Shown one piece after another: positions 5,227-60,575 of a stretch of DNA of 64,000 bases. The notes below the pieces were generated by a model. That model was not told the DNA's origin, searched no databases, and saw only the letters and a program-made list of their open reading frames with translations. A program made the position numbers and the translations under genes. Location of the stretch: the NCBI RefSeq assembly GCF_032191835.1, contig NC_083225.1:49352001-49416000 (forward strand), given 5' to 3'. The first letter of the stretch is position 1; each line of letters opens with the position of its first letter. The DNA is from Heteronotia binoei (Eukaryota).

Positions 5227-6070
5227 AGTGCTTGTCAGTCTCCTCCCCTCTCTGTGCAGCCTCAAACAAGATGGCTAGCAATACACCATCAAAAAGCCAA
5301 GAGGAGAAAAGAAAATGTGCTGTGTTGACAGAAACCCAGACATCAAAGATAATTGGATGCTCTGAAAGAAGAGAAAGCCACAGCCAACTGATGTGTGAGT
5401 CTGACATAGGTTCATCAACTATCTGCACTATTAAGTACTATTAACTGGCAACCCCCCATTCCCCATGATTGCCAGATAACAAAGCTCTTAATGAATTTAT
5501 TTATTTATGCATTTAAAGTCTGTAATGTCCAAGTGTGATGTCCTTTACATTTTCCATTGCTGGGGTGGGGGTGTGTGTCATTTTCTGTTCGGAATCTCAG
5601 TTAAGCAAAGAAGCATTACATTTTGTTCTTTCTCTGGGGCTGACTTCTTGATTCATTAGGCTGCATATATTCCACTCTGTTGACTAAAGGTCAACAAGAA
5701 GCTGATGGGGTGTTATGCCAGATATTCAAGAAAACACAATTAGTATTTTTGTACTACTTTTCATGTTTCTATAGTAACAGCTGTAAATGATGAAAATAAA
5801 ATATATGGTTGCATTAAATCAAATAGAGGCACAAACCAAAATATCATGTTCCTTTAAGATCTATTAAGGTGGGAATAGGAGGAATAATAGCTAATTAAAT
5901 GGAAGATTTAGAGGAACTCATCACTGTGGTCAAATATTTAGGTGCCTCCACACTCAACAGAGAAAATATAGAAATAATGATTAATATTTTTCATAACATT
6001 ACTATAAAAATCAAAAGTATCTGTACAGAAGGATAAGCAATGTTGATACTATGCAGTTAGAATGAAAAAG

Positions 6071-6205
6071 GTCTCTACAGAGGTTAAGCCAAAGGTTAAG
6101 ATTGGAATCTCAGTCAAGCAGCAGTTCACAGAAGAGGAAATCTACAAGGAAAGAGATAGTCAAATAGCAGCTATCGAGAAGACCTTTGAGGACGCTCAGA
6201 AGTCG
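6071..6205 (+). pseudogene. PAF1: Isolated PAF1 fragment (one exon plus the end of the preceding exon), followed by a GT donor and intron-like sequence
   Basis: [40 protein letters not shown] versus recalled human [40 protein letters not shown]. Ends TCG|gtgagc. I saw no other PAF1 exons nearby. Confidence 0.85.
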
Positions 6206-6438
6206 GTGAGCCAACCTCCCCCGGGGAACTTGCTGGGGTGTCGATAACAGGCTGGATTTAAGGCTTCAAAAGAGGACTTGGTGTAGGGGAAAATGTCCCA
6301 GCCACAAGGAGCAAAGTTGCGTTTGGAAACAGAATGGTTTCTTTAAACACTTTCTTTGAACTCTTCCCCCCCCCCCCCAAAAAAAAAACCCTGGTGCCCT
6401 CCAGTTCCTCATAATGCCTAATTTTGTCTTGAAACATT

Positions 6439-6932
6439 GACTGAGGGGTGACATGATAGAGGGACTGAGGGGAGACAAGATAGAGGTTTACAAGATTGTG
6501 CATAGGATAGAGAAAGCAGAGGAAAAAATCCTTTTCTCCCTTTCTCACAATATGAGAACTCGTGAGCACTCAGTGAAATTGCTAAGCAATTGGGTTAGAA
6601 TGGATAAAAGGGTGATTAACACATGGAATTCACTGCCACAGGAGATGGTGGCAGCTGCAAGCATAGACAGCTTCAAGAGGGGATTGGAGAAGCATATGGA
6701 GCAGAGGTCCATCTATTAGTGACAGCGTGTTGGAACTCTCTGTCTAGGGCAAGTGATTCTCTGTATTCTTGGTGCTTGGGGGGGCACAGTGGGAGGGCTT
6801 CTAGTATCCTGGCCCCACTGGTGGACCTCCTGATGGCATCTGGGGTTTTTTGGCCACTGTGTGACACAGAATGTTGGACTGGGTGGGCCATTGGCCCAGT
6901 CCAGCATGGCTTCTCTCATATTCTTATGTTCT
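6439..6932 (+). mobile_element. CR1 LINE 3' fragment
   Basis: Degraded ORF2 C-terminus (LRGDKIEVYKI...WNSLPQEMVAAASIDSFKRGL), CR1-type 3' UTR and ttcttatgttct tail. Confidence 0.85.
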
Positions 6933-8163
6933 ACAATTTTCTGTCTCATGAGGTGTATGTAATCTGTATTACTATGGCTGAGTTCATAACTGTAACAATA
7001 ATTCATATTGTCTTTATTTATTAAAGGTGTTGTACACTCTGTCCAAGAGCCTCAGGGCAGGATACCTGGGATTTTCTAGTGTGATCCTTATAACACTGAT
7101 AAAAGGTAGGCTAGGATTTGTTCTAAACAGCATTACATCTTTCTAGCCTCACTGAAGCCTAAGAAGAAGTTTAGCTAGTACATCATACTTGATTGCAACA
7201 CATCTCTTTACATCTGATTTTACATTGTGCTTTTTACATCTGATTTTTTGTCCTCACTGATTAGAATTTTTATTCCATTTTTACTCATTAGAAGAACATG
7301 TTATCAAGTAATAGGATGCTATAGGATTCAGTAGCCATAAAATACCCACTAATGTGCAGGGAGACTCTCTGTTAAACTTCCTAATACTCTAGGACAATCT
7401 GCTAATGATTTATCTATGGGAACTAATGATGAGAGATGTTCTCCTTACATCTGGGAATCTCTCTCCAGCCTTAGAGAATAAAAAACATTTGAATTTGAGT
7501 AGGTAGCAGCTTCCATTAAGAGATATGAAGGCCTGGAAAGAAATGTAAACATTCAGAAATAAACTGACCCTGTATTTTTCAAAGACCCCATCTTTTCTGA
7601 TGGAAAAACAGAAATTTGGAGGAGCACTTGCTTATGTTTCCGAATGAATTGTCTGTTTCTGAAGACAAGGTTTTATCCACTCACAGTGTATAGCATGATT
7701 TTTTAAAAATATATATAAAACAGATTTCAGCAATAGAGAATAACAATTCCTATGTATACTGTAGACATATACAATGTACTTTCAAGAGTGTCCATTGTGA
7801 ATACCTTTGTAACAATATGCCAATACATAAGCAAATGCAGATGAGCAAAAGCATTATAAAGCATTCTTAAACAAAACCAGAAGCTCAGCAGCACCTCAAA
7901 GATCCCCCCGCCACCAAAAAAAGAAAGATTATTCCAGCATAAGGTTTAAGGAGTCAGAATTCATGGTCAGTGTAAATTCATCAGACCCAAATTAGGGTAC
8001 AGTCCTAACAATGTCTACTTTGCAGTAACACATACTTTTTTCAACAAGGCTTACTCCCAGGAAAGTGTCTTTGTGACATATACACAATAGAAGGAAGGGT
8101 GCCTGAGTTAAAAAGAGAGGTCAGTATAACATAACATCTAATCCAAAGAGTAATCCATTTACT

Positions 8164-18276: not shown

Positions 18277-20487
18277 TTAATCCAACACTATACCTTTACT
18301 TTTTACCCAACGAAATATTGGTTCCCAACTCTCTTTACATTTTTGTATATTGCCATCCCGTAGCCTTGTAGTCATTAAATCCAGTTCCGCAGCTTCTATA
18401 AGTTTTACAATGAATTCTTCTCTGGAAGGTATATTTGGTAACTTCCAGTATTTTGCATACAATACTCTTGCCACCGTAACAATATACATTAACACCTTAA
18501 TTGTTTTAGGCGGGAAGGTCTCTGTACAGACATTTAAAAGATATAGTTCTGGGGAGTGGTGTAATGTAATTTTTAAAATGTTCTGAGTCCAAATACTAAT
18601 TAACGCCCAATACTTTTTAGCGTGTTCACAATTCCACCAAACATGAAATAATGACCCTTTTATCTTTTTGCACTTCCAGCATTTATCAGAATAATTGGGA
18701 TGGACTTTGGCCAATCGATCTGGAGTTAAGTACCAGCGATAGATCATTTTATAGAGGTTTTCCTTATACAAAGCTGGCTTTATTAATTTTACATTTCTTT
18801 TCCATAATTTCTCCCAGTCTTCTATAGCAATACTATAGCCAAAATCCCTCAACCATTTAACCCAAGATTCTTTCACCACTTCTCCTTGCATTTTCTCCTT
18901 AAGCAACCACTCATAGGTTTTGGAAATTAATTTCTGGTCTGTCTGGATAATTTGGTCGAGGTCATTTAGTTTCTTAGAAAAGCCAAATTCTTTATCTTTT
19001 TGATATCTTGATTTTATTTGGCATTTGAGCCACCAATCCATTTGGTCCATTTCTTCTATTCGCAAGTTATTTTGTCTGTCTAATAAGTTTTGATAAGTTA
19101 AATTATTCCAGTTGTAAAGATTCGGGTGGGAGTGAGCCTCTATCGGTGATAACCACCTTGGCGTATAAGAATAGAACTTCCTAATCTCTATCCAAGCTCT
19201 GAAAAGAGATCGTCTTACCTCATGTCTCCAAAAGGAGCTATTTTGTGGGGGATTTTGGTACCAAAGATACCCATGCCATCCTCTCTCCAGACCCGCTCCC
19301 TCTATCACCAAGATTCTTTTATTTTTTAGTGCAAACCAGTCTGTTAGCCAAACTATTCGGCAAGCCATATGGTACAAATTCCATTCTGGCAGAGTAAGAC
19401 CACCCCTAAGTTTGCTATCCTGGAGTACCTTGAGCCTAATTCTGGGCTTTTTATTCTGCCAGATGAACAATGGAGTTATTTTGTTGATCTGTTGAAAAAA
19501 AAGTTTTGGAAGCAAGATAGGGATCATCTGACAGAAGAACAATATTCTTGGCAATACATTCATTTTTATGGTTGCTATCCTGCCCAGAAGTGAGATATGC
19601 AGATCTTTCCATCTGGTTAAGTCTTGTTGTATATCTTTTACTAATTTCTCATAATTGTTTCGATATAAGTCTTTCAAATCATTAGTCATTTGAATTCCTA
19701 AATATCTTATTTTTTTCCCGTATAAAAATTCCGACTGAATTTCAAATTGACTAACTTGTTCTTTATTCATATTTTTAGTAAAAAATTTCGTCTTCTGGAC
19801 ATTAATCCTGAGTCCCGCTACTTGCCCATATTGTTTAAATGTTTCTTTCAAATGCGCAATGGATAAATTAGGATCCTCCAAGACACACAGTAGATCATCT
19901 GCAAAAGCTTGAACCTTCAACTCCTCTCCCTTGATTTTGATGCCTCTTATTTCATCTTCATCTCTAATTCTTTGCAACAAAAGTTCTAAGGTTAAAACAA
20001 ATAGGAGGGGGGATAGGGGACACCCCTGTCTTGTGCCTTGTGCTATTTCGATCAGATCCGAATTGGTGTTATTAAAATTAATCTTGGCATTTTGTTCTGT
20101 ATAGATAGTCTTCACCATGTTAGAAAAATTTTCTCCACAGCCCACTGCTTTTAATGATCTCAAAATGAAATCCCAGTTCACATTGTCGAAGGCTTTCTCT
20201 GCATCGACAAATATAAACGCCACTTGCTTCTCTGGGTGCTCTTTATAAAATTCAATAGCGTTTAATAAGAATCTCAAATTTTGCCTCATTTGTCTACCTG
20301 GAATGAAGCCTGTTTGGTCTTCATGGACAATGGTGCCGATAACCTTTTTAAGTCTGTTTGCCAACACTGTAGCGAAGATCTTGTAATCGGCATTCAACAA
20401 CGAGATAGGTCTATAATTTCTCACTTCTGCTGGGTCTGTACCTTCCTTGTGTATTAACGAGATCAACGCCTCCTTCCAAGATACTGG
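18277..20487 (-). pseudogene. L1 ORF2 C-terminal part (RT plus CCHC knuckle), open frame but disconnected from EN
   Basis: YRPISLLN, DAEKAFD, QGTRQGCPLSP, FADD, YLG and CWKCx7Hx4C. Confidence 0.92.
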
Positions 20488-21634
20488 GCTTAAGTTTGTA
20501 TGCCAACCACCTACTAGTTTTGTTTGCACTTTCAAAGTGGGTTTGCTTCATCCATTTCAGCTTCTTTTCTACCTCCTCCATTAATAGTAGGTTAATCTGA
20601 TGTTGAATAGCTGAGATCTTTAGCCTTATCTCTTCTGTGTTTCTTTCCTTTAGTTGCTTCTCTTGCTCCCCTAATTTAAAAACCAATTCATTATAGGACT
20701 TCAATCGTTCTTTTTTCCTTCCCGCTGCATATCTTATTGCAATTCCCCGAAAAAAAGCTTTAAATGCATCCCAGATAATATGCATGCTGGTATCCTTGAC
20801 TAAATTGTGTTGAAAGAATTCTTTGATTTCCTTCTTGGCTGTTTCCAAAAATTTATCCTCTTTCAGGATCTGCAGGTTAAGGGTCCAACGAGAATTTTTT
20901 GAAGTTCCTATCAAATTCACCTGTATAGGATTGTGATCAGCATAAGTTCTTGGTAAAATATCTACCTGCTGGAGCGACAACATTAAGTCAGCCGATATCC
21001 AACACATATCGATCCTTGACCAGGACCTATGTGCCGATGAATAAAAAGTATAATCTTTAGTTGAGGGGTTCTTTGTTCTCCACGCATCTAGTAGATTAAA
21101 TTCATCTGCTAGTTTTAAAAAAGCTTTTGGCAAGATGTTCCGTATCTTTCTTTTTTTTTGTTCCTCAAATTTCTTATCCTTTTCCATGTCAAACACCGCA
21201 TTATAATCGCCAATTATGCAACAGTTCTTCGGTTCCAATTCTATCAGTTTTCTATGCAGAGTTTGGTAGAATTTCTCTAAATTCTCATTAGGAGCGTAAA
21301 TGTTCGCTAGTATCACTTTGTTACCATTAATGTCTATCTCTATTATCACTATTCTTCCCTTCTTATCCATATAAAGACATTTGGAGTGAATAGATCTGGA
21401 TATATAAATGGCTACTCCCCTCTTTTTTTTTTCTGGATCAGATGAATGATAGAGAATTCCTAATTTGTCATTTTGAAGGTATTTTATATCTTTTTCTTGA
21501 ATGTGCGTCTCCTGTAAACAAATTATTGAGGAGGAAGTCTTTTTCAGTTGCTGGAAGATTCTTCGTCTTTTTCGTGGGTCATTTAGACCGTTAACATTCA
21601 CTGATGTTATTTGCAATCCAGGCTTAGATCTCAT
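20411..21634 (-). pseudogene. L1 ORF2 N-terminal part (APE endonuclease), frameshifted at about 20488
   Basis: NVNGLN, CLQETH, NIYAPN, GDYN, SRID and ADH motifs. L1-like sequence stops after SRWLAYKLK. Confidence 0.9.
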
Positions 21635-22632
21635 TTTGACAAATCTATACTATCAGGTATTAATTTCTGGACTTTTTTAGTTCTGTTCTTTGTCCTAGTT
21701 CTGTCTCTCTGCGACCTCTGCACAGTTCGTTCCTCTGGATTACTCTGGCAGTCTTCTTCTTCTTGTTCGTCCCCTGTTTCCGATTCTCGACTACTCAAAT
21801 CCACAAATTGTTCCCAGAATTCTTCTAATTTTTCCATCGAGTTTATATTATATCTTCTGGATTGGTATGTAAAAAAAATCCCTTCCGGGATTAACCATCT
21901 GAATTGTATTGAGTGTCTAGTCAGCCATGATGACAATTTACGATATTTAACTCTACGCTGTCGAACTTCCCAGGGGACATCCTTCAACACTTTAATTTTG
22001 ACATCTTTCCATTTGAACTCCTGCTCTTTAGCTTTCCTCTGAATTTTTTCGCATGTTGTAGGATGTACAAATTTAACTTGGACCTCTCTTGCCAAATTAT
22101 GTCGCCGCGTGTAATTGGAGGAGACTCTTCTAGCCCACTCAATGTCTCTCCTTCCCCCCTCCAGGCATTCATCATCTTCAAAAGTCAGCACCTCCATAAT
22201 CTTCTCTAATATATTTTCATTCTTTTCCTCTGGTATATCCTGGAAGCGTAATATGTGGGCCGCTTTCTCCACCTCTAGCCTTATTACCCTTTCCTCTAGT
22301 TGGGCCACTCTTGCTGCGTTATCTTGAACTTTGTTGGACATCTCTTTTTCTTTTTCCTCTATCTTGTCCACTTTAGCAGTCAAACTGTGAGTCTGCTGGG
22401 TATTCCCTAGCAATTGTTTTTGGAATTCTTCAACCTGTTTGTTAGTTTTTATTATCTGTCCCATTAAGTCTACTTTCATCACCTCTAACGCTTCCTGGTT
22501 TTGTTTAAAGCCAGCCATCACTATGTTTTGTAGCTTCTCAATGGCATCTTGATTTGTTGCCTCTGGCACTAGTTTCCCCCCTCCCCCCGGTGTGGGTGAG
22601 GGGGTACCTTGTCCCAATTTTTTAGGTCCCAT
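21631..22632 (-). CDS. L1 ORF1p, 333 aa (coiled coil, RRM-like region, CTD; Transposase_22-like), intact
   Basis: Heptad-rich N-terminal half; HILRFQDIPEEKNE, IEWARRV and IKVLKDVP motifs typical of L1 ORF1; lies directly upstream of the EN ORF. Confidence 0.88.
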   Translation of the reverse strand: MGPKKLGQGTPSPTPGGGGKLVPEATNQDAIEKLQNIVMAGFKQNQEALEVMKVDLMGQIIKTNKQVEEFQKQLLGNTQQTHSLTAKVDKIEEKEKEMSNKVQDNAARVAQLEERVIRLEVEKAAHILRFQDIPEEKNENILEKIMEVLTFEDDECLEGGRRDIEWARRVSSNYTRRHNLAREVQVKFVHPTTCEKIQRKAKEQEFKWKDVKIKVLKDVPWEVRQRRVKYRKLSSWLTRHSIQFRWLIPEGIFFTYQSRRYNINSMEKLEEFWEQFVDLSSRESETGDEQEEEDCQSNPEERTVQRSQRDRTRTKNRTKKVQKLIPDSIDLSK

Positions 22633-26280: not shown

Positions 26281-29118
26281 TTTTTTTTTTTTTTTTTTTA
26301 AAGTTTTAAAGTTTTATTACTAAAAATCAACTACAAACGTAACAAAATGCTAACACACTAATAACGTGAAACATATAACATAAAAAACAACACAATACAC
26401 AACACAATATACATACTACTCCCTACCACATCATCCCCTACCAACTACCAACCACCCACACTGGAGAGGGATAGGGGGGTTAAACATAAAAGCATTACAC
26501 AGTTCAATGCTTCATCTATACATTATCCTGATATACTCTGTTTTTATATGTCTTATATCATATAACATATGTCATATATCATATATCAAAACCTATCATA
26601 TATCATAACCTCTGTTTTTAACCCAGTCATATACAGGGTCCCATTCCTCCCGACATTTCTGCACATTACCACCTCTTAATCGGGTGGTCATCAAATCTGC
26701 TTCCGCCGTTTCAAAAAGTTTAGATATAAATTCTTCTCTGTTAGGAGTTCTGTCCTCCTTCCAGTACTTAGCATATAAGATTCTGGCAATTGTAACTATG
26801 TACAACACTAATTTCAACTTGGTCGCTGGTAAATTTTGTCTGCAAATGTTTATGAGATACAGTTCCGGAACATGCTTTACTTGTATTTTCAGAATTTTTT
26901 GAATCCAGATATTGACTTGTGTCCAATATTTCCTGGCCTTTTTACAATGCCACCATATATGGAACAGAGAACCTTTGACTTCGGTACATTTCCAACATTT
27001 ATTGGAGTAAGAGGGATATATTTTTGCCAATCTGTCTGGAGTGAGATACCATCTATAAACCATTTTATACACATTTTCTTTGAGGTCTGCTGGTTTTATT
27101 AACTTCATATTCTGCTTCCATAGCTTCTCCCACTCTTCCAGATCTATATTGTAACCAAAGTCTTTCAACCATCTAATCCAGGCTTCTTTCACCACTTCAT
27201 CCTGCATCTTGGCTTGGAGCAGCCATTCATATACCTTGGCAATTAATTTTTGTTTAGACTCCAAAATCAAATCTAGATCAGAGTCGGAATTCCCAAAACC
27301 TATTTCTTTATCTTTTCGAAATCTCGATCTCACTTGACATTGTAGCCACCAAGATAGCTTTAAAACTTCTTCTTCAATCAGTTCATTGTGGTCATTTAAC
27401 AGATAAGCATAGTCCTGTTGATTTTCCCAATTATATAATTTAGGATGCGACGAAGCCTCTATCGGGGAAATCCATTTTGGCGTCTGTTTATACAGTACTT
27501 TTATTTCGCTCCAGACCGCATACAAAGCTCTTCTTATTTCATGTCTGAGAAACCGCCCGGTTTTAGTAGGAGTTTTATACCACATATAACTATGCCAACC
27601 TTCTCCCAGACCATCGCCCTCTATGGACAGTAGCCTTTTATTGTCCAATTTACACCAAGTTCTCAGCCACGCAATGCAGCACGCTTTATAGTATAATTTC
27701 CAGTCTGGGAGAGCAAATCCTCCTCTTAGCTTAGTGTCTTGCATGACTTTCATTTTTATTCTGGCCTTCTTACCCTGCCAAATAAACATTCTAGTCAACT
27801 CGTTAAGTTGTTGGAAGAAGGATTTGGGTAATGCAATTGGAATCGTTTGAAATAAAAATAAAATTCTCGGAAGTATATTCATTTTAATTGTAGCGACTCG
27901 ACCAAGAAGTGAAATCTGTAGATCTTTCCATTTCATTAGATCCCTACGGATCTCTTTCAAAATTTTTTCGTAATTATCCCTATATAGATTCTTTAAATTA
28001 TTAGTCAGGAATATTCCTAAATATTTAACCTTTTTTTCATTCTTAAATCCTGAGAGCTGCTCCAATCTTTCAATTTGATCCTTTTCCATATTTTTCAATA
28101 GAATCTTAGTTTTAGTGGCATTCAATTTAAATCCAGATACTTCTCCAAACTCATTCAGTCTTTGTTTAAGGCGCTCTATCGATGACATAGGTTGTTCTAG
28201 TATAAATACCAAATCATCTGCAAATGCCAACGTCTTTAATTCTGTATTATTTATTCTAATTCCTTGAATTTGGGAATCTTCTCTTATCTTCTTAATCAGC
28301 GGCTCCAAAGTCAATATAAAAAGTAGTGGAGATAGAGGGCACCCTTGTCTTGTACCTTGTTCTATTTCTATTGAATCCGTCGTTACTCCATTAAAATTAG
28401 CTTTGGCTGTCTGTTTCGTGTAAATTGCTTCGACCATTGAGCAATATCTTTCTCCACATCCAACTCCTGCCAATGTCTCTTTAATGAAGTTCCAGTTGAC
28501 ATTGTCAAAAGCCTTTTCCGCGTCTATCAAAATCGCCGCGAATTCTTTATCTGAATGTTCCCTATAATATTCAATTGCATTCAGAAACAGTCTCACGTTT
28601 TGGTTCATTAAACGTTCCGGGACAAAACCTGTTTGATCTTCATGAACTAGACTTCTGATAACTTTCTTCAATCTATTTGCTAATATTGTTGCGTAGATCT
28701 TATAATCACTATTCAATAGAGAGATTGGTCTATAATTTTTAATTTCTGCTGGGTCAGAATCTTCTTTGTGTATGAGAGATATTAAGGCCTCTTTCCACGA
28801 TTCCGGAATCTCCCCCGTGTTGTAAACATTTTCCAATACTCTCTTAAAGGGCAGCAGCAACTCATCTTCGAAAACTTTGAAGAATTCAATCGGCAGTCCG
28901 TCTGTACCCGGCGTCTTGTTACTTTTTTGAGTTTTAATAGCTTCAACTACTTCCTGCATTGAAATTGGGCTCTCTAAACTTACTTGTTGTTCCTTTGTTA
29001 ATTGCTTCAGTTCCACTTCTTTTACATAAGTCTCTTGTTTTTGCTGATCAATCTTCTGTTTCTTATACAAATTCCGATAGAAATTTTGAATAATTAATTT
29101 CATTTGAGAATTTTGGAA
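26281..29118 (-). mobile_element. 5'-truncated L1 of a second subfamily
   Basis: TSD agttctctgaatga(tttt) at 26267-26284 and 29119-29136; 19-nt poly(A); AATAAA at 26313-26318; no EN or ORF1. Confidence 0.95.
26596..29103 (-). CDS. Uninterrupted 835-aa L1 ORF2 remnant (linker/Z region, RT, CCHC) lacking the endonuclease
   Basis: KTPGTDG, YRPISLLN, DAEKAFD, QGCPLSP, FADD and CWKCx7Hx4C. First element-encoded ATG is at 29103; about the first 24 residues of the track ORF come from flank and TSD. Confidence 0.85.
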   Translation of the reverse strand: MKLIIQNFYRNLYKKQKIDQQKQETYVKEVELKQLTKEQQVSLESPISMQEVVEAIKTQKSNKTPGTDGLPIEFFKVFEDELLLPFKRVLENVYNTGEIPESWKEALISLIHKEDSDPAEIKNYRPISLLNSDYKIYATILANRLKKVIRSLVHEDQTGFVPERLMNQNVRLFLNAIEYYREHSDKEFAAILIDAEKAFDNVNWNFIKETLAGVGCGERYCSMVEAIYTKQTAKANFNGVTTDSIEIEQGTRQGCPLSPLLFILTLEPLIKKIREDSQIQGIRINNTELKTLAFADDLVFILEQPMSSIERLKQRLNEFGEVSGFKLNATKTKILLKNMEKDQIERLEQLSGFKNEKKVKYLGIFLTNNLKNLYRDNYEKILKEIRRDLMKWKDLQISLLGRVATIKMNILPRILFLFQTIPIALPKSFFQQLNELTRMFIWQGKKARIKMKVMQDTKLRGGFALPDWKLYYKACCIAWLRTWCKLDNKRLLSIEGDGLGEGWHSYMWYKTPTKTGRFLRHEIRRALYAVWSEIKVLYKQTPKWISPIEASSHPKLYNWENQQDYAYLLNDHNELIEEEVLKLSWWLQCQVRSRFRKDKEIGFGNSDSDLDLILESKQKLIAKVYEWLLQAKMQDEVVKEAWIRWLKDFGYNIDLEEWEKLWKQNMKLIKPADLKENVYKMVYRWYLTPDRLAKIYPSYSNKCWKCTEVKGSLFHIWWHCKKARKYWTQVNIWIQKILKIQVKHVPELYLINICRQNLPATKLKLVLYIVTIARILYAKYWKEDRTPNREEFISKLFETAEADLMTTRLRGGNVQKCREEWDPVYDWVKNRGYDI

Positions 29119-32100
29119 AGTTCTCTGAATGATTTTGACTGCACATTCCTCTGAAGATTTGCTCTGCAATAATTCACTTAATCCTGACACACTGACCGAA
29201 TATGAACGAAACAGCTATGAGAAGGCCGCAGTGTATCATCTAATCCGATAAACTGTCTGCATCTAACATTACAAGAAGAAAACATCACCAGCCATTAAGC
29301 TTCCATAAGCAGTCAATGTTTCAACAACAGTTACTAAATCCTTGTTGTAAAATTATAGCTCTTGTCAGCTGAGAAATTTATATTCGTGGGGCTTTAGTTA
29401 ATATTGGCTGAAGGTAATAATCAGACAGCCAGCAAGCTGATTTGTTTTCTGTCAAGCATTCTGTTAGGGAATCTGACATAGGGAGGGGCTTGTTTCTAAG
29501 GAACATGGTATTACACCTTGGTACATAAGGGTTCCAATTTGTTTTTGATACAGCAAGCGCAAACCAGAAGTAGAGCTGGCAAACTCACTATTGTCCTCAA
29601 GTGTTGAGGCTCAGACAGGCCTGTTAGCTAAAGGCTGCTCAGGTTTGCAGTTTTAAAGCACGAAAAAGTTACCTCAGAATAAACTGAAAAGCCATGGTGT
29701 AATCTGAGAGGAAAAAGCACTTATTAACATCAGTAGTCTGAGATTTCATAAGGACATTGGTGAGCACTTTTATCTCTTTCTGAATATACATCAAAACCTA
29801 AAAGCAAGGAGACAGAAGTCACATAAAAGCTTAGATCCTCTGGAATATTTCTGCAGGGGGAAGGATATGTGCTCATGGAGAACAATGTTCTCACCTTTTT
29901 CTTTCTGTAGCAGCCTGAAACACACCCCAAAACACTGCTCCTGGGGGTGTCCTATCCCCAAGGAAGGAGATTTCAGGGGGGAGGCATCATTTCAAGCAGC
30001 CACAGGAGGGAAGAGGTGAGAAAGTTCTGTAATGTGACCACATACCCTTCTACTTGCATAAGAAATCCAGGGGGTTGAAGCCAAAGTAATTTAAGTTACC
30101 CAAAGTGCATACAGATATCTTGGCTCCTTTGGTGGACAGCTAATGACCAAAAAGCAAAATGGTAAAGAAAGAGAGAAAAAAATAACCTGACATCAGACAA
30201 AGATTGAAATAGGCAAATAAATGATCAATCTACATCCTTTGTTGGTAATATGAAATAGGAAGATCCCTACCCCTTAATTCATTATTGTATAACAGCGGGT
30301 GTAGTATAACCAGGAGATCCAAAAGGCAGCCTGAAATTCTAGCTCTTTTTGTGGAAAGGTTTATTTTTTTTGGGGGGGGGGGGAGAACTGTGATTGGTCC
30401 AAGATAACCCAGATGGCTCCAAGTGGGGGAGTGGGAAATTGAACCTGGTTCTCCAGATTCCAGAGTCCACTGCTCTTAACCAAACTGTCCCTACTACATA
30501 AAAAGTGGTGCACTGACCTGGATAGCCCAGGCTAGCTGTATCTCGTCAGATCTCAGAAGCTAAGCAGGGTCAGTCTTGGCTACTATTTGGAAGGGCAACC
30601 TTCAAGGAGTAATAGGGGCATGATGAAGAGGCAGGAAACGGCAAACTACCTGAAATGTCTCTTGCCTTAAAAACAAGTCTACCTCATCACCTAGTGATGC
30701 ATAATGCTATAAGAGAACTTCTGGCTGCCAGACAATCTTAGCATCTCCTGGATACACTACAATGCCATACAATGATGACAAAAATGAACATGAAGATGAT
30801 AGTTGCGTGCAGGTGAAACATCATCCTAAGACATGGTAGCATTAGAAAACATTGTATAACTATAAAGGCACTCCATGATGTACATTAAACTTGATAAAGG
30901 CTAATTTTTCATATTAATGTAGTGAGTGAGGGGGATGGAAGATTTGGGGTTTGGAGAATTTGTGGTTCAGTATGTCTTCCCACAGGCAAGAGAAAAATGC
31001 AAGTACAACCTAGCCCTCTGACTGGCCAAGTATGTTTTCCTTTTCTTTTTAGGATGGCAATGTGACCGGGTTAAATGTTGTAGGATTATATTTCAATTGT
31101 CTTAATAGATGATGCTATGTTCAATTGTTCTTTGCATTCACCTGTTCAGTCATGTTTTCCCATTGAACTGTTATTAATTATCATGTATGCTATTACATGC
31201 TTTTAATTAAAAGCTGACTCCTTCTCTTACTCGTAGGGGTAATCAGATCCAGTAACACAATTATTAGTGCGCTTGAGTCATTCTTCTAATAGGCTGCCAC
31301 TAAAATAAAGCTGTTCTTTCCGCTGGCAATTTTACTAGCATCTTTCATCAGTCATACTCACTGATCACAGTCCTCTGTACCATCCAGGTATCAGGGTCCT
31401 ACAAGCATCTATACAGCAAATGCCAGTGCAGCAGTCAAAGAAAGCCCTGAAGGTGTCAAGCAGAAGGCCCTTGAGGAAATATGTGTTACATGCATTGGAG
31501 CATGAACCGCTGAGCAGGAATCCAGAGTATGTAAGAGGCTGATGTCAATACACAAGTGAGCAGAGAGTATCAGTGTAAGCAATTTACCTAAGAAATAGCA
31601 TGTTTCTCTTAAAGGAGTGCTAATGACTGATGAGTAATTTGTGTGTAATGGGCTGAGGTGAGTCTCTCCATAAAATCCTGAATGTGGCAAACTATTATTT
31701 TTTAATTTATTTTATTTTACTTGTACCCTGCCTTTTCCCACAAATGGGGCTCAGGGTGGCTTACAACATAAAACCATCAACAGTAACCCCCCCCCAATAA
31801 AACAGTAGCTGACACATATCAAACAAAGGTAATCACCAGAAAAATCCCATGTCTGAATAAAATCTAAAACCAGCAGGGCACAGGAAAGGGAAAACCTACA
31901 GAGGAAGCCGTGACAATAAACCTACAACAGAAGCTGAAAAGCTCAAGGCTACAATTACTAAACCAACAAATGTATTTATAAATAATTATAAGTGCGTTTG
32001 TTCTGTTTCTTCAAAAATACAATTACAAATGAATGTACAACTTCATAGTATCAAAAGATACAAAAATCTCAACACATACAATGACTGTTGACTCGAAGGA

Positions 32101-35546: not shown

Positions 35547-36175
35547 GTCTACCACTATATTCTCTGCACACTGCTTTTTGTTTCTGGCCAAACTCTCCCT
35601 TTTGGCATGTTAGTTGGTTTTCTTTACAAGTGCAATTGACCACATTTTCCACTTGTTTCTTAATATGTAGGCAAAGACTGACTGTGGATTTTATAATACA
35701 GAATTATAGGTGTGCTTCGAGTAGTATGGGGCTGGGTACCACAGGAAGTACCATGAGGTTAAGAGAGGGATTATAAACTACAACAGAAAGACTCATGGAA
35801 ATGGAACAAAGTAAAGAGAGTGTACACTTTCTAGACAAAATGCATTTCTATTCTATAGTGACTGCGAAGCAAATTTTGGGTTGAAGTTTTTGTTGTGATG
35901 ATTGTCTCTCATATTCAGCATGCTGAAATTAAGCCATATACTCTGGAGTAAAAAGTCTTTGACAGTTTTCAACAGCATATTGGCTGCACTGATTTAAACT
36001 AGATTGAATGAGACATCTTTTCCCATTGGATCCTTTATATCAGAAAACTGTGACAATCCTATTCATTGCAATTTTTTCCCCTCCAAAAGAGATGATAAGA
36101 CTGTGAAAAACCTGTTTTGGAAGGCAAAGCTTTGCTTTGTCTCTAAATCAACAAGCACCAGGCAAAAAAACTTAC

Positions 36176-36271
36176 CTCCACATACAGAATAGGGAATATT
36201 CCAATCTTATCTCCCAGCATTCCTTCTGCCCAGTTATCGTCTACTCTCCTGATGACTGTCAGTATTTCATC
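36176..36271 (-). CDS. SH3RF3: SH3RF3 coding exon (probably exon 3): rest of the second SH3 domain (too short for the ORF track)
   Basis: 96 bp, [32 protein letters not shown]. Acceptor ttttag|GAT, donor GAG|gtaag. Continues in frame from the previous exon. Confidence 0.95.
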
Positions 36272-37317: not shown

Positions 37318-37587
37318 GAAGAAGATATTGGATTTATATCCTGCCCCATACTCTGAATCTCAGAGTGGTCACAATCTCCTTTACCTCCCCCCCCCCACAA
37401 CAGACACCTGTGAGTTAGGTGGGGCTGAGAGAGCTCTTACAGCAGCTGCCCTTTCAAGAGCAACTCCTACGAGAACTATGGCTGACCCAAGGCCATTCCA
37501 GCAGCTGCAAGTGGAGGAGTGGGGAATCAAACCCAGTTCTCCCCGATAAGAATCCACGCACTTCACCACTATACCAAACTGGCTCTC
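37318..37587 (-). mobile_element. Squam3-type tRNA-derived SINE
   Basis: Head gagagccagtttggtatagtggtgaag...gggtttgattcccc; (TTC)n-like tail. Confidence 0.8.
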
Positions 37588-43940: not shown

Positions 43941-45247
43941 GCGCCTTTAAAGTCGAGCAGGAAGTACTTCAGGGGAAAGGTCAGCAATACAGTCCCTCCG
44001 CTTGTTTTGCTTTTGTTTCAGAGGAACTAAGTGAGTGTGTGTGAGTGGGTGAGTGAGAGAGAGAGAGAGAGGGAGAGAGAGAGAGAGCGAGCAGCGTAGC
44101 CCCTGTTCTTTTCAGATGTTGTTGTGGAGGAACCAACCGTGTGTGTGAGAGAGAGTGTGGGTTGCCAATCCCCAGGTTTGGAGGCCTCCGCCCCAACACC
44201 TTTGGGTCATCAGAAAGCGGCGGGCGGGGGGGGGGAGGGAAATGTCTACTGGGCAATTATTCCCTATGATGAATGATTCCCATAGGGAATGATGGGGAAT
44301 TGATCCATGGTTATCGGAGGCTCTAGAGGGGCTGTTTTTTGAGGTAGAGGCACCAAATTTTCAGTATAGTATCTAGTGCCTCTCTCCAAAATACCCCACA
44401 AGTTTCAAAACTATTGGGCCAGGGGGTCCAATTCTATGAGCCCCAAAAGAAGGTGCCCCTATCCTTCATTATTTCCTATGGAAGAAAGCAATTTAAAAAG
44501 GTGTGCTTTCCCCTTTAAATGTGATGGCCAGAACTTCCTTGGAGTTCAATTATGCTTGTCACATCCTTGCTCCTGGCTCCACCCCAATGTCTTCTGGCTC
44601 CACCCCCAAAGTCTCCTGGTTCCACCCCCAAAGTCCCCCGATATTTCTTGAATTGGACTTGGCAACCCTAAGCCCACCCTCACCTATCTGAAAGAAACAA
44701 ACTTAGTGCAGAGAGAAGCACGCAGCTACAGAATTTGGGATCAGGCAAAGGAAACCAAACAAATCCTATTTTCTCTGGAAAGCAAAGGACATTAAGAGGT
44801 TACTTGCTTGTTGTGCTTGAAACTTTATTTCCCTCCCGGCTCTGCTCTCCATTTCTCAATGATCATTCTTAAAGGAAACAAGAATCAGAAAGCTGGGCAT
44901 TTTCCTGAGAAGGGGGGGGGGGAGTTTGAGCAGTAAGTGGGCTATGCTGGCTGGGAGGGGAAGATTCAGGGTAGAGTTCCCTTATAACAACCTCTCATGA
45001 TGAGGAAGGCTGAGTGGGTGACCTCCCATTTTCCTTCTGGATCTATCCTCATTTGTTGGTGTAAAGTGCTGTCATTTGGGCAGTTTTAAAAGTAGATGGG
45101 CTCTACACAACATTGACGTAGAGGCCCGCCAGATACAAACATTCTACTAGCAGTGGCGAGAGCATTGCAGCCTGGTTGAGCTTCTCTTATTCGCCAGTCA
45201 GTAGAGTCTGTTCCACATTTTCAGTGTTCCTATTCTTCTGTGTGTAG

Positions 45248-48081: not shown

Positions 48082-51045
48082 ATGCTTGGCCTGGGGATTC
48101 CGGTACTCCTGGGGAGGGGAAGGTATGACGGTGGGAACAGGCAGAAATGGAGGGGAAGGAGATCGAGACAAGATAGTGCTCGACCACCTTCCAGCCTGTG
48201 TCCCATCCCGATGGTGACAGGTAGCGGGGCAAGGCGAAATTACTCGCCTCCGTCACTGGTGTTATGTAATGCCAGGTCCATTAATAATAAGACCTCCATC
48301 CTCCGGGAATTCCTGCTTGAGCAGGATATGGACCTGGCATGCGTGACCGAGACCTGGGTTCGCGATGGAGAGACCGTAGCTCTCTCCCAGATGGCGCCCC
48401 CGGGATACTCGGTCTTTCACCAGTCGCGGACTAGCGGGCGGGGGGGAGGGGTGGCCCTGTTCATTCGAGAGGCTTACTCCTTCCGGGCCCTCCCGGCTCC
48501 GGAGATCAAGGGCATTGAGTGTGCCGGCCTGGCGTGGGATGTTGGGGAGGGGTTGGCGATCTGGCTGGTGTACCGACCGCCTAACGCCTTACTATCACTG
48601 ATGGAGGCCGCAGCAGGATGGGCATTGGAGCACCCGAGGCTTCTGATCCTGGGTGACTTCAATGTTCATGCCGATGACGTGACCTCCAATCAGGCGATGG
48701 ACCTAGTGTCTTCCATGGCGACACTAGGACTCTCCCAAATAGTTACGACACCCACTCACCAGGCCGGTCACATGTTAGACTTGATCTTCGCGTCAGGAGT
48801 CTTAGTGAACGATCTTGCTTCTATAGCAGTGCCATGGTCGGATCACTATGCCCTCAAGGCTCGTGTGGACGTCCCACCCCAACCCCGTTTGGGCGGCGAG
48901 CTTATTTTAGCTCGCCCGCGGAGCCTGATGGACCCGGAACGGTTCCTGACGGCCCTGCGGGATCCCTGGCCCCCTGGCGATTCCCTCGATGACCTGGTGG
49001 AGTCTTGGAATAATAGGCTCACCGGGGCCATCGATGAGATCGCGCCTAGGCGTCCTCTGCGCCCTCGTTCAAGGCCGACACCCTGGTATAACCAGGGGTT
49101 GCGGCAGTTGAAACGAGGACTCAGACGACTAGAGAGGCAATGGCGGCGTACCCGAGATGAAGCGACTTGAACATCTTATAGAGAGGTTATGAAGTCCTAT
49201 GAGGTGGCAGTCAAGGCCGCAAAGAAAACTTACTTTGCGGCAGAGATTGCGTCCGCAATTTCGCGCCCGGCACAACTGTTCAATACAATTCGGACTCTTA
49301 CAACGCTGCCACAGGGCAGACCAAATTTTAATGAATTGGAAATTGGCTGTGAGGCTTTTGCGAATTTTTTTGCGGATAAAATCGCATCGCTCCGTTCCGA
49401 CTTCCCTGCCACATTAGATACAGTTAGCGAACCTGAGGCTCCGTGCCTGTCTTCGGATTGTGTCCTGGACGGCTTCGGCGCGCTCAGCCTGGAAGAAGTT
49501 GACAGGATCCTCCTATCTGCACGCCCAACAACTTGTAAATTGGACCCATGCCCCTCCTGGCTTATTAAGACCTGCCAGAGGGAGCTAAGATATCCTATAC
49601 GGGATATCATAAATAGATCCCTATTGGAGGGACATTTTCCATCGGCGCTCAAAGAGGCGGTGGTCCGTCCCCTCCTGAAGAAAACAACGTTAGATCCGAC
49701 CGAATTGGCACACTACCGGCCGGTATCGAAGTTGCCCTTTTTGGGCAAACTTATACAGAGGGCAGCGGCGTTGCAGCTACAGAGCTTCCTGGAGGATGCT
49801 TCTGTCCTCGACCCCTACCAGTCTGGTTTTCGCCCGGGCCATGGGACGGAGGCGGTGCTGGTCGCCCTGGTGGATGACCTTCGGCGACATCTGGATCAAG
49901 GCGGCTCGGCGATGCTGATGTTGTTGGACCTATCGGCAGCGTTCGATATGGTCGACCATCGGCTCCTGGCGTGCCGCCTTGCCGACGCAGGGATTCAGGG
50001 GTTGGCCTTGCAATGGCTTTCCTCTTTCCTTGACGGTCGGGGACAAAGGGTGGCGATTGGGGAGGAACTGTCCCGGAGACACACGCTTGAGTGTGGGGTG
50101 CCTCAAGGGGCGGTGCTTTCCCCGATGTTATTTAACATCTATATGCGCCCCCTTGCCCAGATGGCCCGAGGGTATGGGCTGGGTTGCCATCAATATGCTG
50201 ATGACACCCAGCTCTATCTGCTTATGGACGGCCGGCCCGCCTGCGCCCCAGAAAATCTGGACCGGGCGTTACAGGCAGTGGCTAGGTGGCTTAGGCTGAG
50301 TGGGCTGAAGCTGAACCCGGCGAAGACAGAGGTCCTTTGCTTAGGTCGCTGCGGCCCGGGAAGGGAACTCCCCCTGCCAGTTTTTGATGGCGCTCCATTA
50401 ACAGCGTCGGGCAGGGTTAAGAGCCTGGGGGTGCTGTTGGAGCCTTCATTGACGATGGAGGCTCAGATAGCAGCCACTGCCAAGTCCGCTTTTTTTCATC
50501 TTAGGCGGGCGAGGCAGTTGGCTCCCTTCCTGGAACGTGACGACCTGGCAACAGTGATTCATGCTACGGTCACCTCGAGGCTGGACTACTGTAATGTCCT
50601 CTACATGGGGCTACCCCTGTGCCGAACCCGGAAGCTGCAGTTGGTGCAGAACGCTGCTGCCCGGCTGTTATTAGGGCTCCCAAGATGGGAGCACATTCGA
50701 CCGGGGCTCCAGGGTCTGCACTGGCTGCCAGTAATATTCCGAGTCCGGTACAAGGTGTTGGTTATGACCTTTAAAGCCCTATATGGCCTAGGACCTGCCT
50801 ACCTTAGGGACCGTCTCTTCCCACACGTTCCCCAGAGAGTACTACGTTCAGGTTCACAAAACCTGTTGGTAGTCCCCGGGCCAAAGGAGGCCCGCCTAAA
50901 ATCCACCAGGGATCGGGCCTACTCAATAACGGCACCTTATTGGTGGAACCAGCTGCCGGAAGAGGTGCGGGCCCTGCGGGATCTAAGGCAATTCCGCAGG
51001 GCCTGTAAGACAGTCCTCTTCCGGCAGGCCTATGATATTAACTGA
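48082..51045 (+). pseudogene. L2 ORF2 (APE endonuclease plus RT) with a single in-frame TGA at 49168-49170
   Basis: Track ORFs 48082-49170 and 49189-51045 share one frame. NARS, VTETW, YRPP, GDFN and SDH (EN); YQSGFRPGHGTE, LLDLSAAFD, GVPQGAVLSP and YADD (RT). Confidence 0.92.
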
Positions 51046-60299: not shown

Positions 60300-60575
60300 C
60301 TTAGTGAAGGTTAGACAGTCCTTGTCTTGATCTTTGTCCTTTATTTCAAAGTCATAAAGTGCTTTGCCTTGAGGTGGAGCTGATGGAAGTGGCTTGATAC
60401 ACTGGATGTAGCTTGCTGGGAAAAAGCCATGGTTTCCATTCAGTTCACCGTGATACCAATTCTCGTCTACTTTTCGTCGCAATATAATAATGTCTCCTTT
60501 GTTAAACTTAAGATCACCTGGCTCTTTCCCCTCATAAGCATACAGAGCCTTTCCATATGGCAGCTGAGAGGAATT
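60300..60575 (-). CDS. SH3RF3: SH3RF3 coding exon (probably exon 2): first SH3 domain and start of the second
   Basis: 92 codons [47 protein letters not shown]...[24 protein letters not shown]. Acceptor ctttcttgttgcag|AAT, donor AAG|gtaaag, 276 bp, phase 0/0. The [14 protein letters not shown] motif matches SH3RF3 rather than SH3RF1 (recall). Confidence 0.95.

What the first reader, a model, noticed from the sequence alone, without database searches (positions are those of the whole stretch)
6071..6932. Orphan, apparently semi-spliced PAF1 fragment next to a CR1 3' end: candidate pre-mRNA/LINE chimeric retrocopy
Seen: 6100-6205 is 106 bp encoding (K)[35 protein letters not shown] and ends at TCG|gtgagc. 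About 230 bp of non-coding sequence follows (with C13 and A10 tracts), then a same-strand CR1 3' fragment. There is no AG acceptor before 6100; the sequence there is AAG CCA AAG GTT AA (KPKVK), resembling the end of the previous PAF1 exon (KPEVK). Recalled: human PAF1 has introns at EVK|IG and AQKS|ISQ around a 106-bp exon. Inference: the upstream intron was spliced out and the downstream one retained, so a partly spliced nuclear pre-mRNA was reverse transcribed, possibly by CR1 RT switching template (as in U6-L1 chimeras). It sits antisense to SH3RF3, and 32/35 aa identity to recalled human PAF1 suggests it is young.
Basis: partly seen in the sequence, partly recalled or inferred. Interest (0 to 1): 0.72.

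Follow-up and report, generated by a model that had tools for sequence, protein, structure and literature searches.

The report
Half-spliced PAF1 retrocopy ending in CR1
An 877-base dead copy of part of the PAF1 gene was made from a half-spliced RNA whose retained intron already held a CR1 jumping-gene tail, which probably gave the CR1 copying enzyme its starting point; it is a tidy but ordinary kind of genomic fossil.

Summary
Window 6100-6205 is the 106-nt PAF1 exon (Pfam Paf1; 40/44 residues identical to human PAF1 149-192). It ends in a GTGAGC donor and has no acceptor in front.

Four gecko PAF1 genes decide the rest. The 29 nt before the exon (6071-6099) are the end of the previous exon, and the intron between them (236 nt in Heteronotia binoei) is precisely absent. 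The stretch after the exon is the downstream intron.

The CR1 fragment is not a separate neighbour. Window 6097-6929 is colinear with the H. binoei PAF1 exon plus downstream intron. That intron holds the same CR1 3' fragment, truncated at the same base, at the same site. Three other geckos lack it. The template-switch idea is therefore unnecessary.

The copy runs to about 6947, 15 nt past the CR1 tail and 3 nt or less from the intron's acceptor. It has no poly(A) and no long target duplication.

Best reading: a partly spliced PAF1 pre-mRNA was reverse transcribed from its intronic CR1 hairpin and octamer tail by a CR1 enzyme acting in trans, then truncated at the 5' end.

It is not young: K2P is 0.11-0.13 to the parent. 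It looks non-functional.

The parts
6071..6099 (+). Last 26 nt of PAF1 exon n-1 (encoding VSNEKPEVK in geckos; here [10 protein letters not shown]), with a 3-nt insertion. It is joined directly to the next exon, which makes this a spliced junction. This is also the 5' end of the copy (5' truncation).
   Evidence: The 15 nt before 6100 match the exon n-1 end at 13/15 (Eublepharis, Sphaerodactylus) and 11/15 (Heteronotia, Paroedura). They match the intron n-1 end at only 3-4/15. See also the sequences and the protein alignment. No PAF1 homology was found upstream of 6071.
6100..6205 (+). PAF1 exon n, 106 nt, encoding residues about 155-190. It is complete and in frame.
   Evidence: Pfam Paf1 and the PDB match to human PAF1. 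It aligns without gaps to four gecko genes and is 92.5% identical to H. binoei.
6206..6430 (+). Retained PAF1 intron n, upstream part. It starts with the GTGAGC donor. Its last 10 nt (aattttgtct, 6420-6429) are the upstream copy of the target duplication made when the CR1 inserted into the parental intron.
   Evidence: 90% identity and K2P 0.11 to H. binoei L002:12882-13098. Positions 6397-6429 also match the last 40 nt of the short, CR1-free intron of Eublepharis.
6431..6932 (+). A 5'-truncated CR1-type LINE 3' end that was already inside the parental intron. It comprises the ORF2 C-terminal frame (6453-6719), the 3'UTR, a 14-bp hairpin (6871-6907) and an octamer-like tail attcttatgttct (6920-6932). 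It also contains a copy-specific 24-bp tandem duplication (6449-6472).
   Evidence: Colinear with L002:13099-13553 at 88.5%, with the same truncation point. The hairpin folds at dG -34.4 kcal/mol, z -2.7. Other copies of the subfamily end ...ttatgttcttatgttct. Another copy continues upstream into the ORF2 frame.
6933..6947 (+). Probable last piece of PAF1 intron n, downstream of the CR1. It holds the second copy of the CR1 target duplication (aattttctgtct) plus a c. The parent continues cag|exon n+1, whereas the window continues atgagg. This is the 3' end of the copy.
   Evidence: tctgtctc follows the CR1 tail in H. binoei directly before cag|ATT. A match within 2 edits to the ancestral intron end aattctgtctc occurs in 0.8% of background 18-mers. 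The boundary could instead be 6932.
6040..6070 (.). 5' flank in the host intron: A-rich gaatgaaaaag. It shares only atga with the 3' flank.
6948..6990 (.). 3' flank in the host intron. There is no poly(A) at the junction and no PAF1 exon n+1 sequence.

Best explanation
Window 6071-6947 is a dead, semi-processed retro-fragment of PAF1.

**Steps shown**
1. In the Heteronotia lineage a 5'-truncated CR1 3' end of about 0.5 kb had inserted, in sense orientation, about 4-14 nt upstream of the 3' splice site of PAF1 intron n.
2. The window segment is one contiguous copy of [last 26 nt of exon n-1][exon n][intron n with that CR1 and about 15 nt beyond it]. Intron n-1 is removed exactly.

**Steps inferred**
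3. The template was a nuclear PAF1 pre-mRNA in which the short upstream intron had been spliced and the CR1-bearing intron had not.
4. Reverse transcription began at or just after the embedded CR1 tail. That tail carries the hairpin and octamer repeat thought to be the CR1 RT recognition site. A CR1 enzyme supplied in trans did the copying at a nick in an SH3RF-gene intron.
5. Synthesis stopped after about 0.88 kb, giving the 5' truncation 26 nt of parental sequence into exon n-1.
6. The native intron end (aattctgtc in other geckos) is itself a near copy of the CR1 octamer ATTCTRTG. This may explain why the CR1 landed there and why priming could start 15 nt past its canonical end.

Nothing indicates a function. 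The open frame is what about 5% decay per lineage would leave.
For: **One contiguous copy.** Window 6097-6929 is colinear with H. binoei PAF1 L002:12774-13553, with residue-level alignments.

**Same CR1 insertion.** The CR1 5' junction is identical in the copy and the parent. The CR1 is absent from the same intron in Eublepharis, Sphaerodactylus and Paroedura, where the intron is 170-280 nt.

**Spliced upstream junction.** 13/15 nt match the exon n-1 end, against 3-4/15 for the intron end. A further 9/12 match beyond a 3-nt insertion.

**Retained downstream intron.** 90% identical to the parent.

**Bona fide parent locus.** The gene lies next to MED29 in all four geckos. The window holds only this one PAF1 piece, inside an SH3RF gene.

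**3' end.** No poly(A) and no direct repeat longer than 4 nt at the ends. The 3' end lies 0-15 nt from the canonical CR1 terminus as defined by other copies.

**CR1 3' signals.** Hairpin and octamer-like tail. The literature describes the CR1 hairpin plus ATTCTRTG microsatellite as the putative RT recognition site, and CR1 as severely 5'-truncating (PMC8665684; PMC4316615).
Against: - The involvement of a CR1 enzyme is inferred only from where the copy ends.
- The end is most likely 15 nt past the canonical CR1 terminus, which a strict tail-primed model does not predict. It also coincides with the 3' splice site, so the two landmarks cannot be separated.
- The tail unit (ttatgttc / attcttatg) is only similar to the published octamer.
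- No empty site, no second copy and no target duplication are available to fix the insertion boundaries.
- L1-type LINEs with long ORFs are present in the same window, so another RT was available.
- The CR1 clade assignment rests on 3'-end features and on my recollection of the ORF2 C-terminal motif. It was not confirmed against a curated library.
Confidence: 0.6

Rival explanations
1. The copy is RNA-mediated, from the same half-spliced PAF1 pre-mRNA, but was not primed at the CR1 tail. A cDNA or RNA fragment with arbitrary ends was captured at a chromosome break, or was made by some other RT. Its ending near the CR1 tail is a coincidence.
For: There is no poly(A), no clear target duplication and no clear microhomology at either junction. 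The 3' end is probably 15 nt past the canonical CR1 end.
Against: A random 3' breakpoint within about 20 nt of a sense CR1 tail in a pre-mRNA of roughly 10-24 kb has a chance of the order of 1% or less. This is my estimate from the locus lengths. The 5' truncation with an intact 3' landmark is the usual LINE pattern.
Confidence: 0.22
2. An L1-type LINE enzyme made the copy by internal priming, and the usual hallmarks were lost.
For: Two L1-like elements with long endonuclease/RT ORFs lie in the same window. Another note from this scan mentions retrocopies with L1-type hallmarks in this genome (unchecked).
Against: The copy does not end at an A-run. The only A10 run (6381-6390) is internal, and the parent has no A-run at that point. 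No 7-20-bp target duplication is present. At about 5% decay per lineage both hallmarks should still be visible.
Confidence: 0.06
3. The ends of the RNA were set by the spliceosome. On this reading the template was an excised, debranched RNA running from a GT inside exon n-1 to the 3' splice site of intron n, with intron n-1 then spliced out of it.
For: The copy starts with GTCTCT and ends 0-3 nt before the parental CAG acceptor.
Against: GTCTCC is a very poor donor. A start on GT has a 1/16 chance. The acceptor is within 15 nt of the CR1 tail, so the 3' coincidence is already explained. The CAG itself is not present in the copy.
Confidence: 0.04
4. The segment arose by DNA-level duplication of the PAF1 exon and intron, followed by exact loss of intron n-1.
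For: The retained intron and the absence of a poly(A) resemble a genomic duplicate.
Against: Intron n-1 is missing to the base, and exon n-1 sequence sits in its place. All four gecko genes keep that intron. Only 26 nt of parental exon n-1 sequence are present.
Confidence: 0.03
5. This is the first reader's model: a CR1 RT copying a CR1 RNA switched template to a separate PAF1 pre-mRNA, as in U6/L1 chimeras.
For: The orientation is right, with the host RNA lying 5' of a same-strand, 5'-truncated LINE. A 24-bp duplication sits at the CR1 border.
Against: The exon, the intron and the CR1 are contiguous in the parental gene and share the same junction base. The duplication is absent from the parent.
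Confidence: 0.02

Closest known systems
Semiprocessed retrocopies, such as rodent preproinsulin I derived from a partly spliced preproinsulin II pre-mRNA (reviewed in PMC3449122)
   Same: The template is a partly spliced pre-mRNA. One ancestral intron is removed exactly and another is retained. The copy lies at a new locus.
   Different: This is only a 0.88-kb internal fragment, with no promoter, poly(A) tail or flanking direct repeats. Its 3' end lies at an intronic LINE tail instead of the transcript's end. It is dead on arrival.
LINE-1 5' transduction, or host-promoter-driven intronic LINE-1 carrying host exons (17 cases in hg38, e.g. RAP1GDS1; PMC13174262)
   Same: Host-gene sequence lies 5' of a same-strand LINE that sits in an intron of that gene, and the two are mobilised as one RNA. 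Splicing of upstream exons is visible in the copy.
   Different: The LINE here is CR1-type rather than L1. It is a 0.5-kb dead 3' fragment and so needs an enzyme in trans. The exon is joined to the LINE through unspliced intron rather than through a splice into the LINE. There is no poly(A) and no TSD.
Trans-mobilisation of RNAs carrying a CR1 3' tail: CR1-tailed SINEs, and the CR1 hairpin plus octamer as RT recognition site (PMC8665684, PMC4316615; PMC5729268 seen by title only)
   Same: The proposed mechanism needs only the CR1 3' hairpin and microsatellite on a foreign RNA.
   Different: The substrate is a one-off Pol II pre-mRNA, not a Pol III SINE family. No amplification is seen. Priming seems to start about 15 nt beyond the canonical tail.
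U6/L1-type template-switch chimeras
   Same: The geometry is the same: a non-LINE RNA lying 5' of a sense, truncated LINE.
   Different: The two parts here are contiguous at the source locus, so no switch is required.

Membership tests
Semiprocessed (partly spliced) retrocopy | At least one parental intron removed exactly at the exon-exon junction | tested here: met
   13/15 nt before window position 6100 match the exon n-1 end, against 3-4/15 for the intron end. The 236-nt intron of H. binoei is absent.
Semiprocessed (partly spliced) retrocopy | At least one parental intron retained and homologous to the parent's intron | tested here: met
   6206-6430 is 90% identical to H. binoei intron n. 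The CR1 part is 88.5% identical.
Semiprocessed (partly spliced) retrocopy | Located away from the parental locus | tested here: met
   The parent lies next to MED29 in four geckos. The window holds SH3RF exons and no other PAF1 exon.
Semiprocessed (partly spliced) retrocopy | Poly(A) tail and flanking direct repeats (L1-type hallmarks) | tested here: not met
   There is no A-run at 6932-6960. The longest shared flank word is atga.
LINE 5' transduction from an intronic source element | Same-strand LINE 3' end at the 3' end of the insert, with upstream sequence colinear with the source locus | tested here: met
   Colinearity of 6097-6929 with L002:12774-13553. The insert ends 0-15 nt after the LINE terminus.
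LINE 5' transduction from an intronic source element | The source LINE is present at the source locus | tested here: met
   The same CR1 fragment, with the same truncation point, is in H. binoei PAF1 intron n.
LINE 5' transduction from an intronic source element | The source LINE is retrotransposition-competent (acts in cis) | tested here: not met
   Only about 500 bp of the 3' end is present, in both parent and copy. An enzyme in trans is needed.
Template-switch chimera (U6/L1 type) | The two parts derive from separate transcripts or loci | tested here: not met
   The parts are contiguous in the parental gene.
CR1-clade LINE 3' end | Stable 3'UTR hairpin directly upstream of the tail | tested here: met
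   14-bp stem at 6871-6907, dG -34.4 kcal/mol, z -2.7. The criterion is taken from PMC8665684.
CR1-clade LINE 3' end | Terminal 8-nt microsatellite ATTCTRTG | tested here: inconclusive
   The tail is attcttatgttct. Other copies end ttatgttcttatgttct, an 8-nt unit that is similar but not identical to the published octamer.
CR1-clade LINE 3' end | Continuity with a CR1-type ORF2 (EN + RT) and a match to a curated CR1 consensus | not testable with these tools
   Pfam has no model for the C-terminal part and the Atlas gave no usable hit. Another copy continues upstream in frame. The LGLFSLEKRRLRGD-type motif is recognised from memory only.

The most novel reading that the evidence does not exclude
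A CR1 ribonucleoprotein picked up a nascent, half-spliced host pre-mRNA in the nucleus because the retained intron carried a dead CR1 tail. If so, any gene with a sense CR1 3' end in an intron is a latent source of exon-plus-intron retrocopies. That would be a hidden, poly(A)-independent route of gene-fragment duplication and exon shuffling in sauropsid genomes, where canonical retrogenes are scarce. An unchecked note from this scan on a CR1-TUSC3 chimera in the same genome hints that it may recur.
Probability: 0.5. Interest if true: 0.5.

Novelty: new member of a known kind. Interest (0 to 1): 0.38.

Why it matters
This is a clean natural record of three things.

- A nuclear, partly spliced pre-mRNA served as a retrotransposition template.
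- A dead LINE tail inside an intron probably sufficed to recruit a sequence-specific (CR1-type) reverse transcriptase in trans. This fits the view that CR1's 3'-end specificity, rather than a lack of RT activity, limits retrogene formation in birds and reptiles.
- A CR1 inserted about 10 nt from a 3' splice site of an essential gene was tolerated.

The locus gives a concrete search pattern: host exon + intron + same-strand CR1 tail, with the parental intron carrying that CR1. A genome-wide survey could use it. The fragment itself has no sign of function.

Tried and rejected

- Later searches used protein ids or H. binoei locus references. The window stretch was used only in local alignment, folding and scripts.
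- Expression, copy number in the genome and population presence therefore remain untested.

**Spliced model.** I compared it exon by exon, with exon n-1 and exon n handled separately by reference. I did not build or search a joined sequence.

**Searches that gave nothing useful.**
- A word search with the H. binoei read-through ORF of this exon found no further gecko parents and no orthologous copies. It returned only unrelated vertebrate exon read-throughs.
- A second full-length PAF1 search showed that only four gecko genes have DNA on record.
- The ESM Atlas gave no usable hit for the CR1 C-terminal frame.
- Local alignment of 5970-6100 against exon n-1 found no PAF1 homology upstream of 6071.
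- No direct repeat longer than 4 nt flanks the insert.

**Readings rejected.**
- That the VSQ/ISQ match means the downstream junction is spliced. It is the GTGAGC donor.
- That the 24-bp duplication at the CR1 border marks a template jump. It is absent from the parent.
- That MKK...VSTE reflects PAF1 MRKTEYISTE with deletions. The better alignment is VSNE-KPEVK.

Full report
**Observation.** Window 6062-6247 (+) is an open frame of 61 codons. It matches Pfam Paf1 at E=7e-10, above the curated cut-off. Residues 8-51 align with human PAF1 149-192 at 40/44 identities. tblastn with a complete gecko PAF1 finds only this one piece in the 64 kb (aa 147-193 at 6071-6214). The segment is not repeated elsewhere in the window.

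**Intron positions.** A library-wide phmmer search returned many short ORFs that are read-throughs of this exon in genomic contigs of diverse vertebrates. They read pyrimidine-rich codons, then R, then IGVSVKQQ... at the 5' side. At the 3' side they read ...AQK(S) followed by V-S. This is what a phase-2 intron (AA|G) before IG and a GTRAGY donor after KS produce.
- The apparent extension of the protein match to VSQ is the donor site plus a chance Q.

**The parental gene.** I fetched the PAF1 genes of four geckos through their annotated proteins:
- Eublepharis macularius, L001
- Heteronotia binoei, L002
- Sphaerodactylus townsendi, L003
- Paroedura picta, L004

All four lie next to MED29. blastn of window 5800-7000 against them gave the decisive result. 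Window 6097-6929 is colinear with L002:12774-13553. That stretch is exon n, the downstream intron, and a CR1 3' fragment inside that intron. Alignments show the same junction in copy and parent (...taattttgtct / gaaac.ttgactg.ggggtgacatgatagagg...), so it is the same CR1 insertion event.

The other three geckos have a short intron of 170-280 nt without CR1. Window 6397-6429 matches the last 40 nt of that short intron. The CR1 piece is therefore part of the copied RNA and not an independent neighbour. Template switching is not needed.

**Upstream junction.** The 15 nt before 6100 match the end of exon n-1 at 13/15 (Eublepharis, Sphaerodactylus) and 11/15 (Heteronotia, Paroedura). They match the end of intron n-1 at only 3-4/15. 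Homology continues for another 12 nt (9/12) beyond a 3-nt insertion, giving VSTE(V)KPKVK against gecko VSNEKPEVK.
- Intron n-1 is 236 nt in H. binoei (L002:12540-12775) and larger in the others. It is missing to the base.
- This requires an RNA intermediate.
- No PAF1 homology exists upstream of 6071, so the copy is 5'-truncated 26 nt of parental sequence (29 nt in the window) into exon n-1.
- I compared the two exons separately by reference. I did not build or search a joined spliced sequence.

**3' end.**
- Other copies of this LINE subfamily end ...ttatgttcttatgttct, which places the canonical terminus at window 6932.
- The next 15 nt (acaattttctgtctc) resemble the native end of the intron: aattctgtctccag| in the geckos without CR1, and tctgtctccag| right after the CR1 array in H. 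binoei.
- They also resemble the 10 nt just upstream of the CR1 (aattttgtct, 6420-6429). They therefore look like the second copy of the CR1's target duplication plus one more intron base.
- Such a match within 2 edits occurs in 0.8% of background 18-mers. I take 6947 as the likely end, with 6932 possible.
- After it the window reads atgagg, where the parent has cag|ATTTCTCA.
- There is no poly(A), and no direct repeat longer than atga flanks the insert.

**The LINE piece.** It holds an ORF2 C-terminal frame (6453-6719). Another copy in L002 continues upstream in frame. It also has a 14-bp hairpin at 6871-6907 (dG -34.4 kcal/mol, z -2.7) and an octamer-like tail.

Published work describes the CR1 3' hairpin plus 8-nt microsatellite (ATTCTRTG) as the putative recognition site of the CR1 RT. 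It also describes CR1 copies as severely 5'-truncated (PMC8665684; PMC4316615).

The tail unit here is similar to that octamer but not identical, and I could not compare the piece with a curated CR1 library. The clade assignment is therefore well supported but not proven.

**Age and source genome.**
- Against H. binoei the exon is 92.5% identical. There are 4 changes on the copy's lineage, two of them non-synonymous, and 3 synonymous changes on the gene's lineage.
- The intron is 90% identical (K2P 0.11) and the CR1 part 88.5% (K2P 0.13).
- The same intron differs by K2P 0.37 between Heteronotia and Paroedura. The copy is therefore roughly a third as old as that split: tens of millions of years, not young. 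Absolute dates were not computed here.
- The window shares interspersed repeats at 85-92% only with the H. binoei locus.
- Another agent's unchecked note calls this genome Bynoe's gecko. L002 is probably the true parent.
- Changes since the event: the copy gained a 24-bp tandem duplication (6449-6472) and its C13 and A10 runs. The parent amplified the CR1 3'UTR in tandem, about 3 x 190 bp and about 11 x 67 bp (L002:13551-14846).

**Context.** Exons of an SH3RF-family gene lie on the minus strand at about 60.3-60.56 kb and 36.15-36.27 kb. They encode the first SH3 domain and the two parts of the second. The best PDB match is SH3RF1, E=4e-29; from memory the sequence looks more like SH3RF3.

**Mechanism.**
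- Shown: one contiguous copy of a PAF1 RNA with intron n-1 spliced and intron n retained, the CR1 being part of intron n.
- Inferred: reverse transcription began at or just beyond the embedded CR1 tail, carried out by a CR1 enzyme in trans.

The argument for the inferred part:
- The 3' end lies within 0-15 nt of a CR1 terminus. A random breakpoint in a 10-24 kb pre-mRNA would do so about 1% of the time or less.
- L1 hallmarks are absent.
- The copy shows the short, 5'-truncated pattern typical of CR1.
- The native intron end in other geckos (aattctgtc) is a 7/8 match to the published octamer. This may explain both the original CR1 landing site and priming slightly downstream of the canonical end.
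- A CR1 about 10 nt from the acceptor also moved the original branch region 0.5 kb away. That could have slowed splicing of this intron and favoured the half-spliced template. This last point is speculation.

The rivals are:
- capture of a cDNA with arbitrary ends
- L1 internal priming
- an RNA whose ends were set by the spliceosome (the copy starts GT and ends next to the acceptor)
- DNA duplication with exact intron loss

They are weighed in their own sections.

**Comparison with known cases.** Semiprocessed retrocopies are textbook (preproinsulin I; PMC3449122). Host exons mobilised together with an intronic LINE by 5' transduction are catalogued for human L1 (PMC13174262). RNAs with CR1 tails are accepted trans substrates of CR1. 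This locus combines the three in a reptile, so I file it as a new member of a known kind. An unchecked first-reader note of a CR1-TUSC3 chimera in the same genome suggests the pattern may recur.

**Limits.**
- Copy number, expression, the empty site and the exact boundaries are therefore untested.

Noticed in passing
L002:13551-14846 (H. binoei PAF1 intron n): The 3'UTR of the intronic CR1 has been amplified in tandem inside the PAF1 intron: about three units of 190 bp, then about eleven units of 67 bp. Each unit holds the hairpin and the octamer tail. The array ends directly at tctgtctccag|exon. The window copy lacks the array, so the amplification is later than the copy or specific to the gene.
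   Followed up: partly
L002:13099-14852, compared with L001:5666-5702: The CR1 inserted only about 4-14 nt upstream of the 3' splice site of an essential gene. This moved the original branch-point region (ctcataatg) 0.5 kb away, now about 1.8 kb. The T-rich CR1 tail must now supply the polypyrimidine tract and branch point.
   Followed up: no
window 18277-22632 (-) and 26596-29190 (-): Two LINEs with long open frames. The first has a 333-aa ORF1-like frame, an endonuclease (Exo_endo_phos) and an RT (RVT_1). They are L1-like in organisation, so poly(A)-type RT sources exist in this genome.
   Followed up: partly
window 48082-51045 (+), with GC-rich 46.7-47.4 kb upstream: A third LINE with endonuclease and RT frames. 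Its C-terminus carries a WNxLP-type motif (L2/CR1-like). A very GC-rich stretch with overlapping long ORFs on both strands precedes it.
   Followed up: partly
window 60300-60560 (-) and 36150-36270 (-): Two coding exons of an SH3RF-family E3 ligase gene. Together they encode the first SH3 domain and both halves of the second. The best solved relative is SH3RF1.
   Followed up: partly
window 37321-37587 and 44226-44620: Short interspersed repeats with many copies (85-92% identical) in the 25-kb H. binoei PAF1 locus. None was found in the three other gecko loci.
   Followed up: no
window 6078-6100: cagaggttaag / caaaggttaag is a near-tandem 11-12-nt repeat just before the exon-exon junction. It accounts for the extra V codon in the copy. 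It may be a slip during or after reverse transcription.
   Followed up: no
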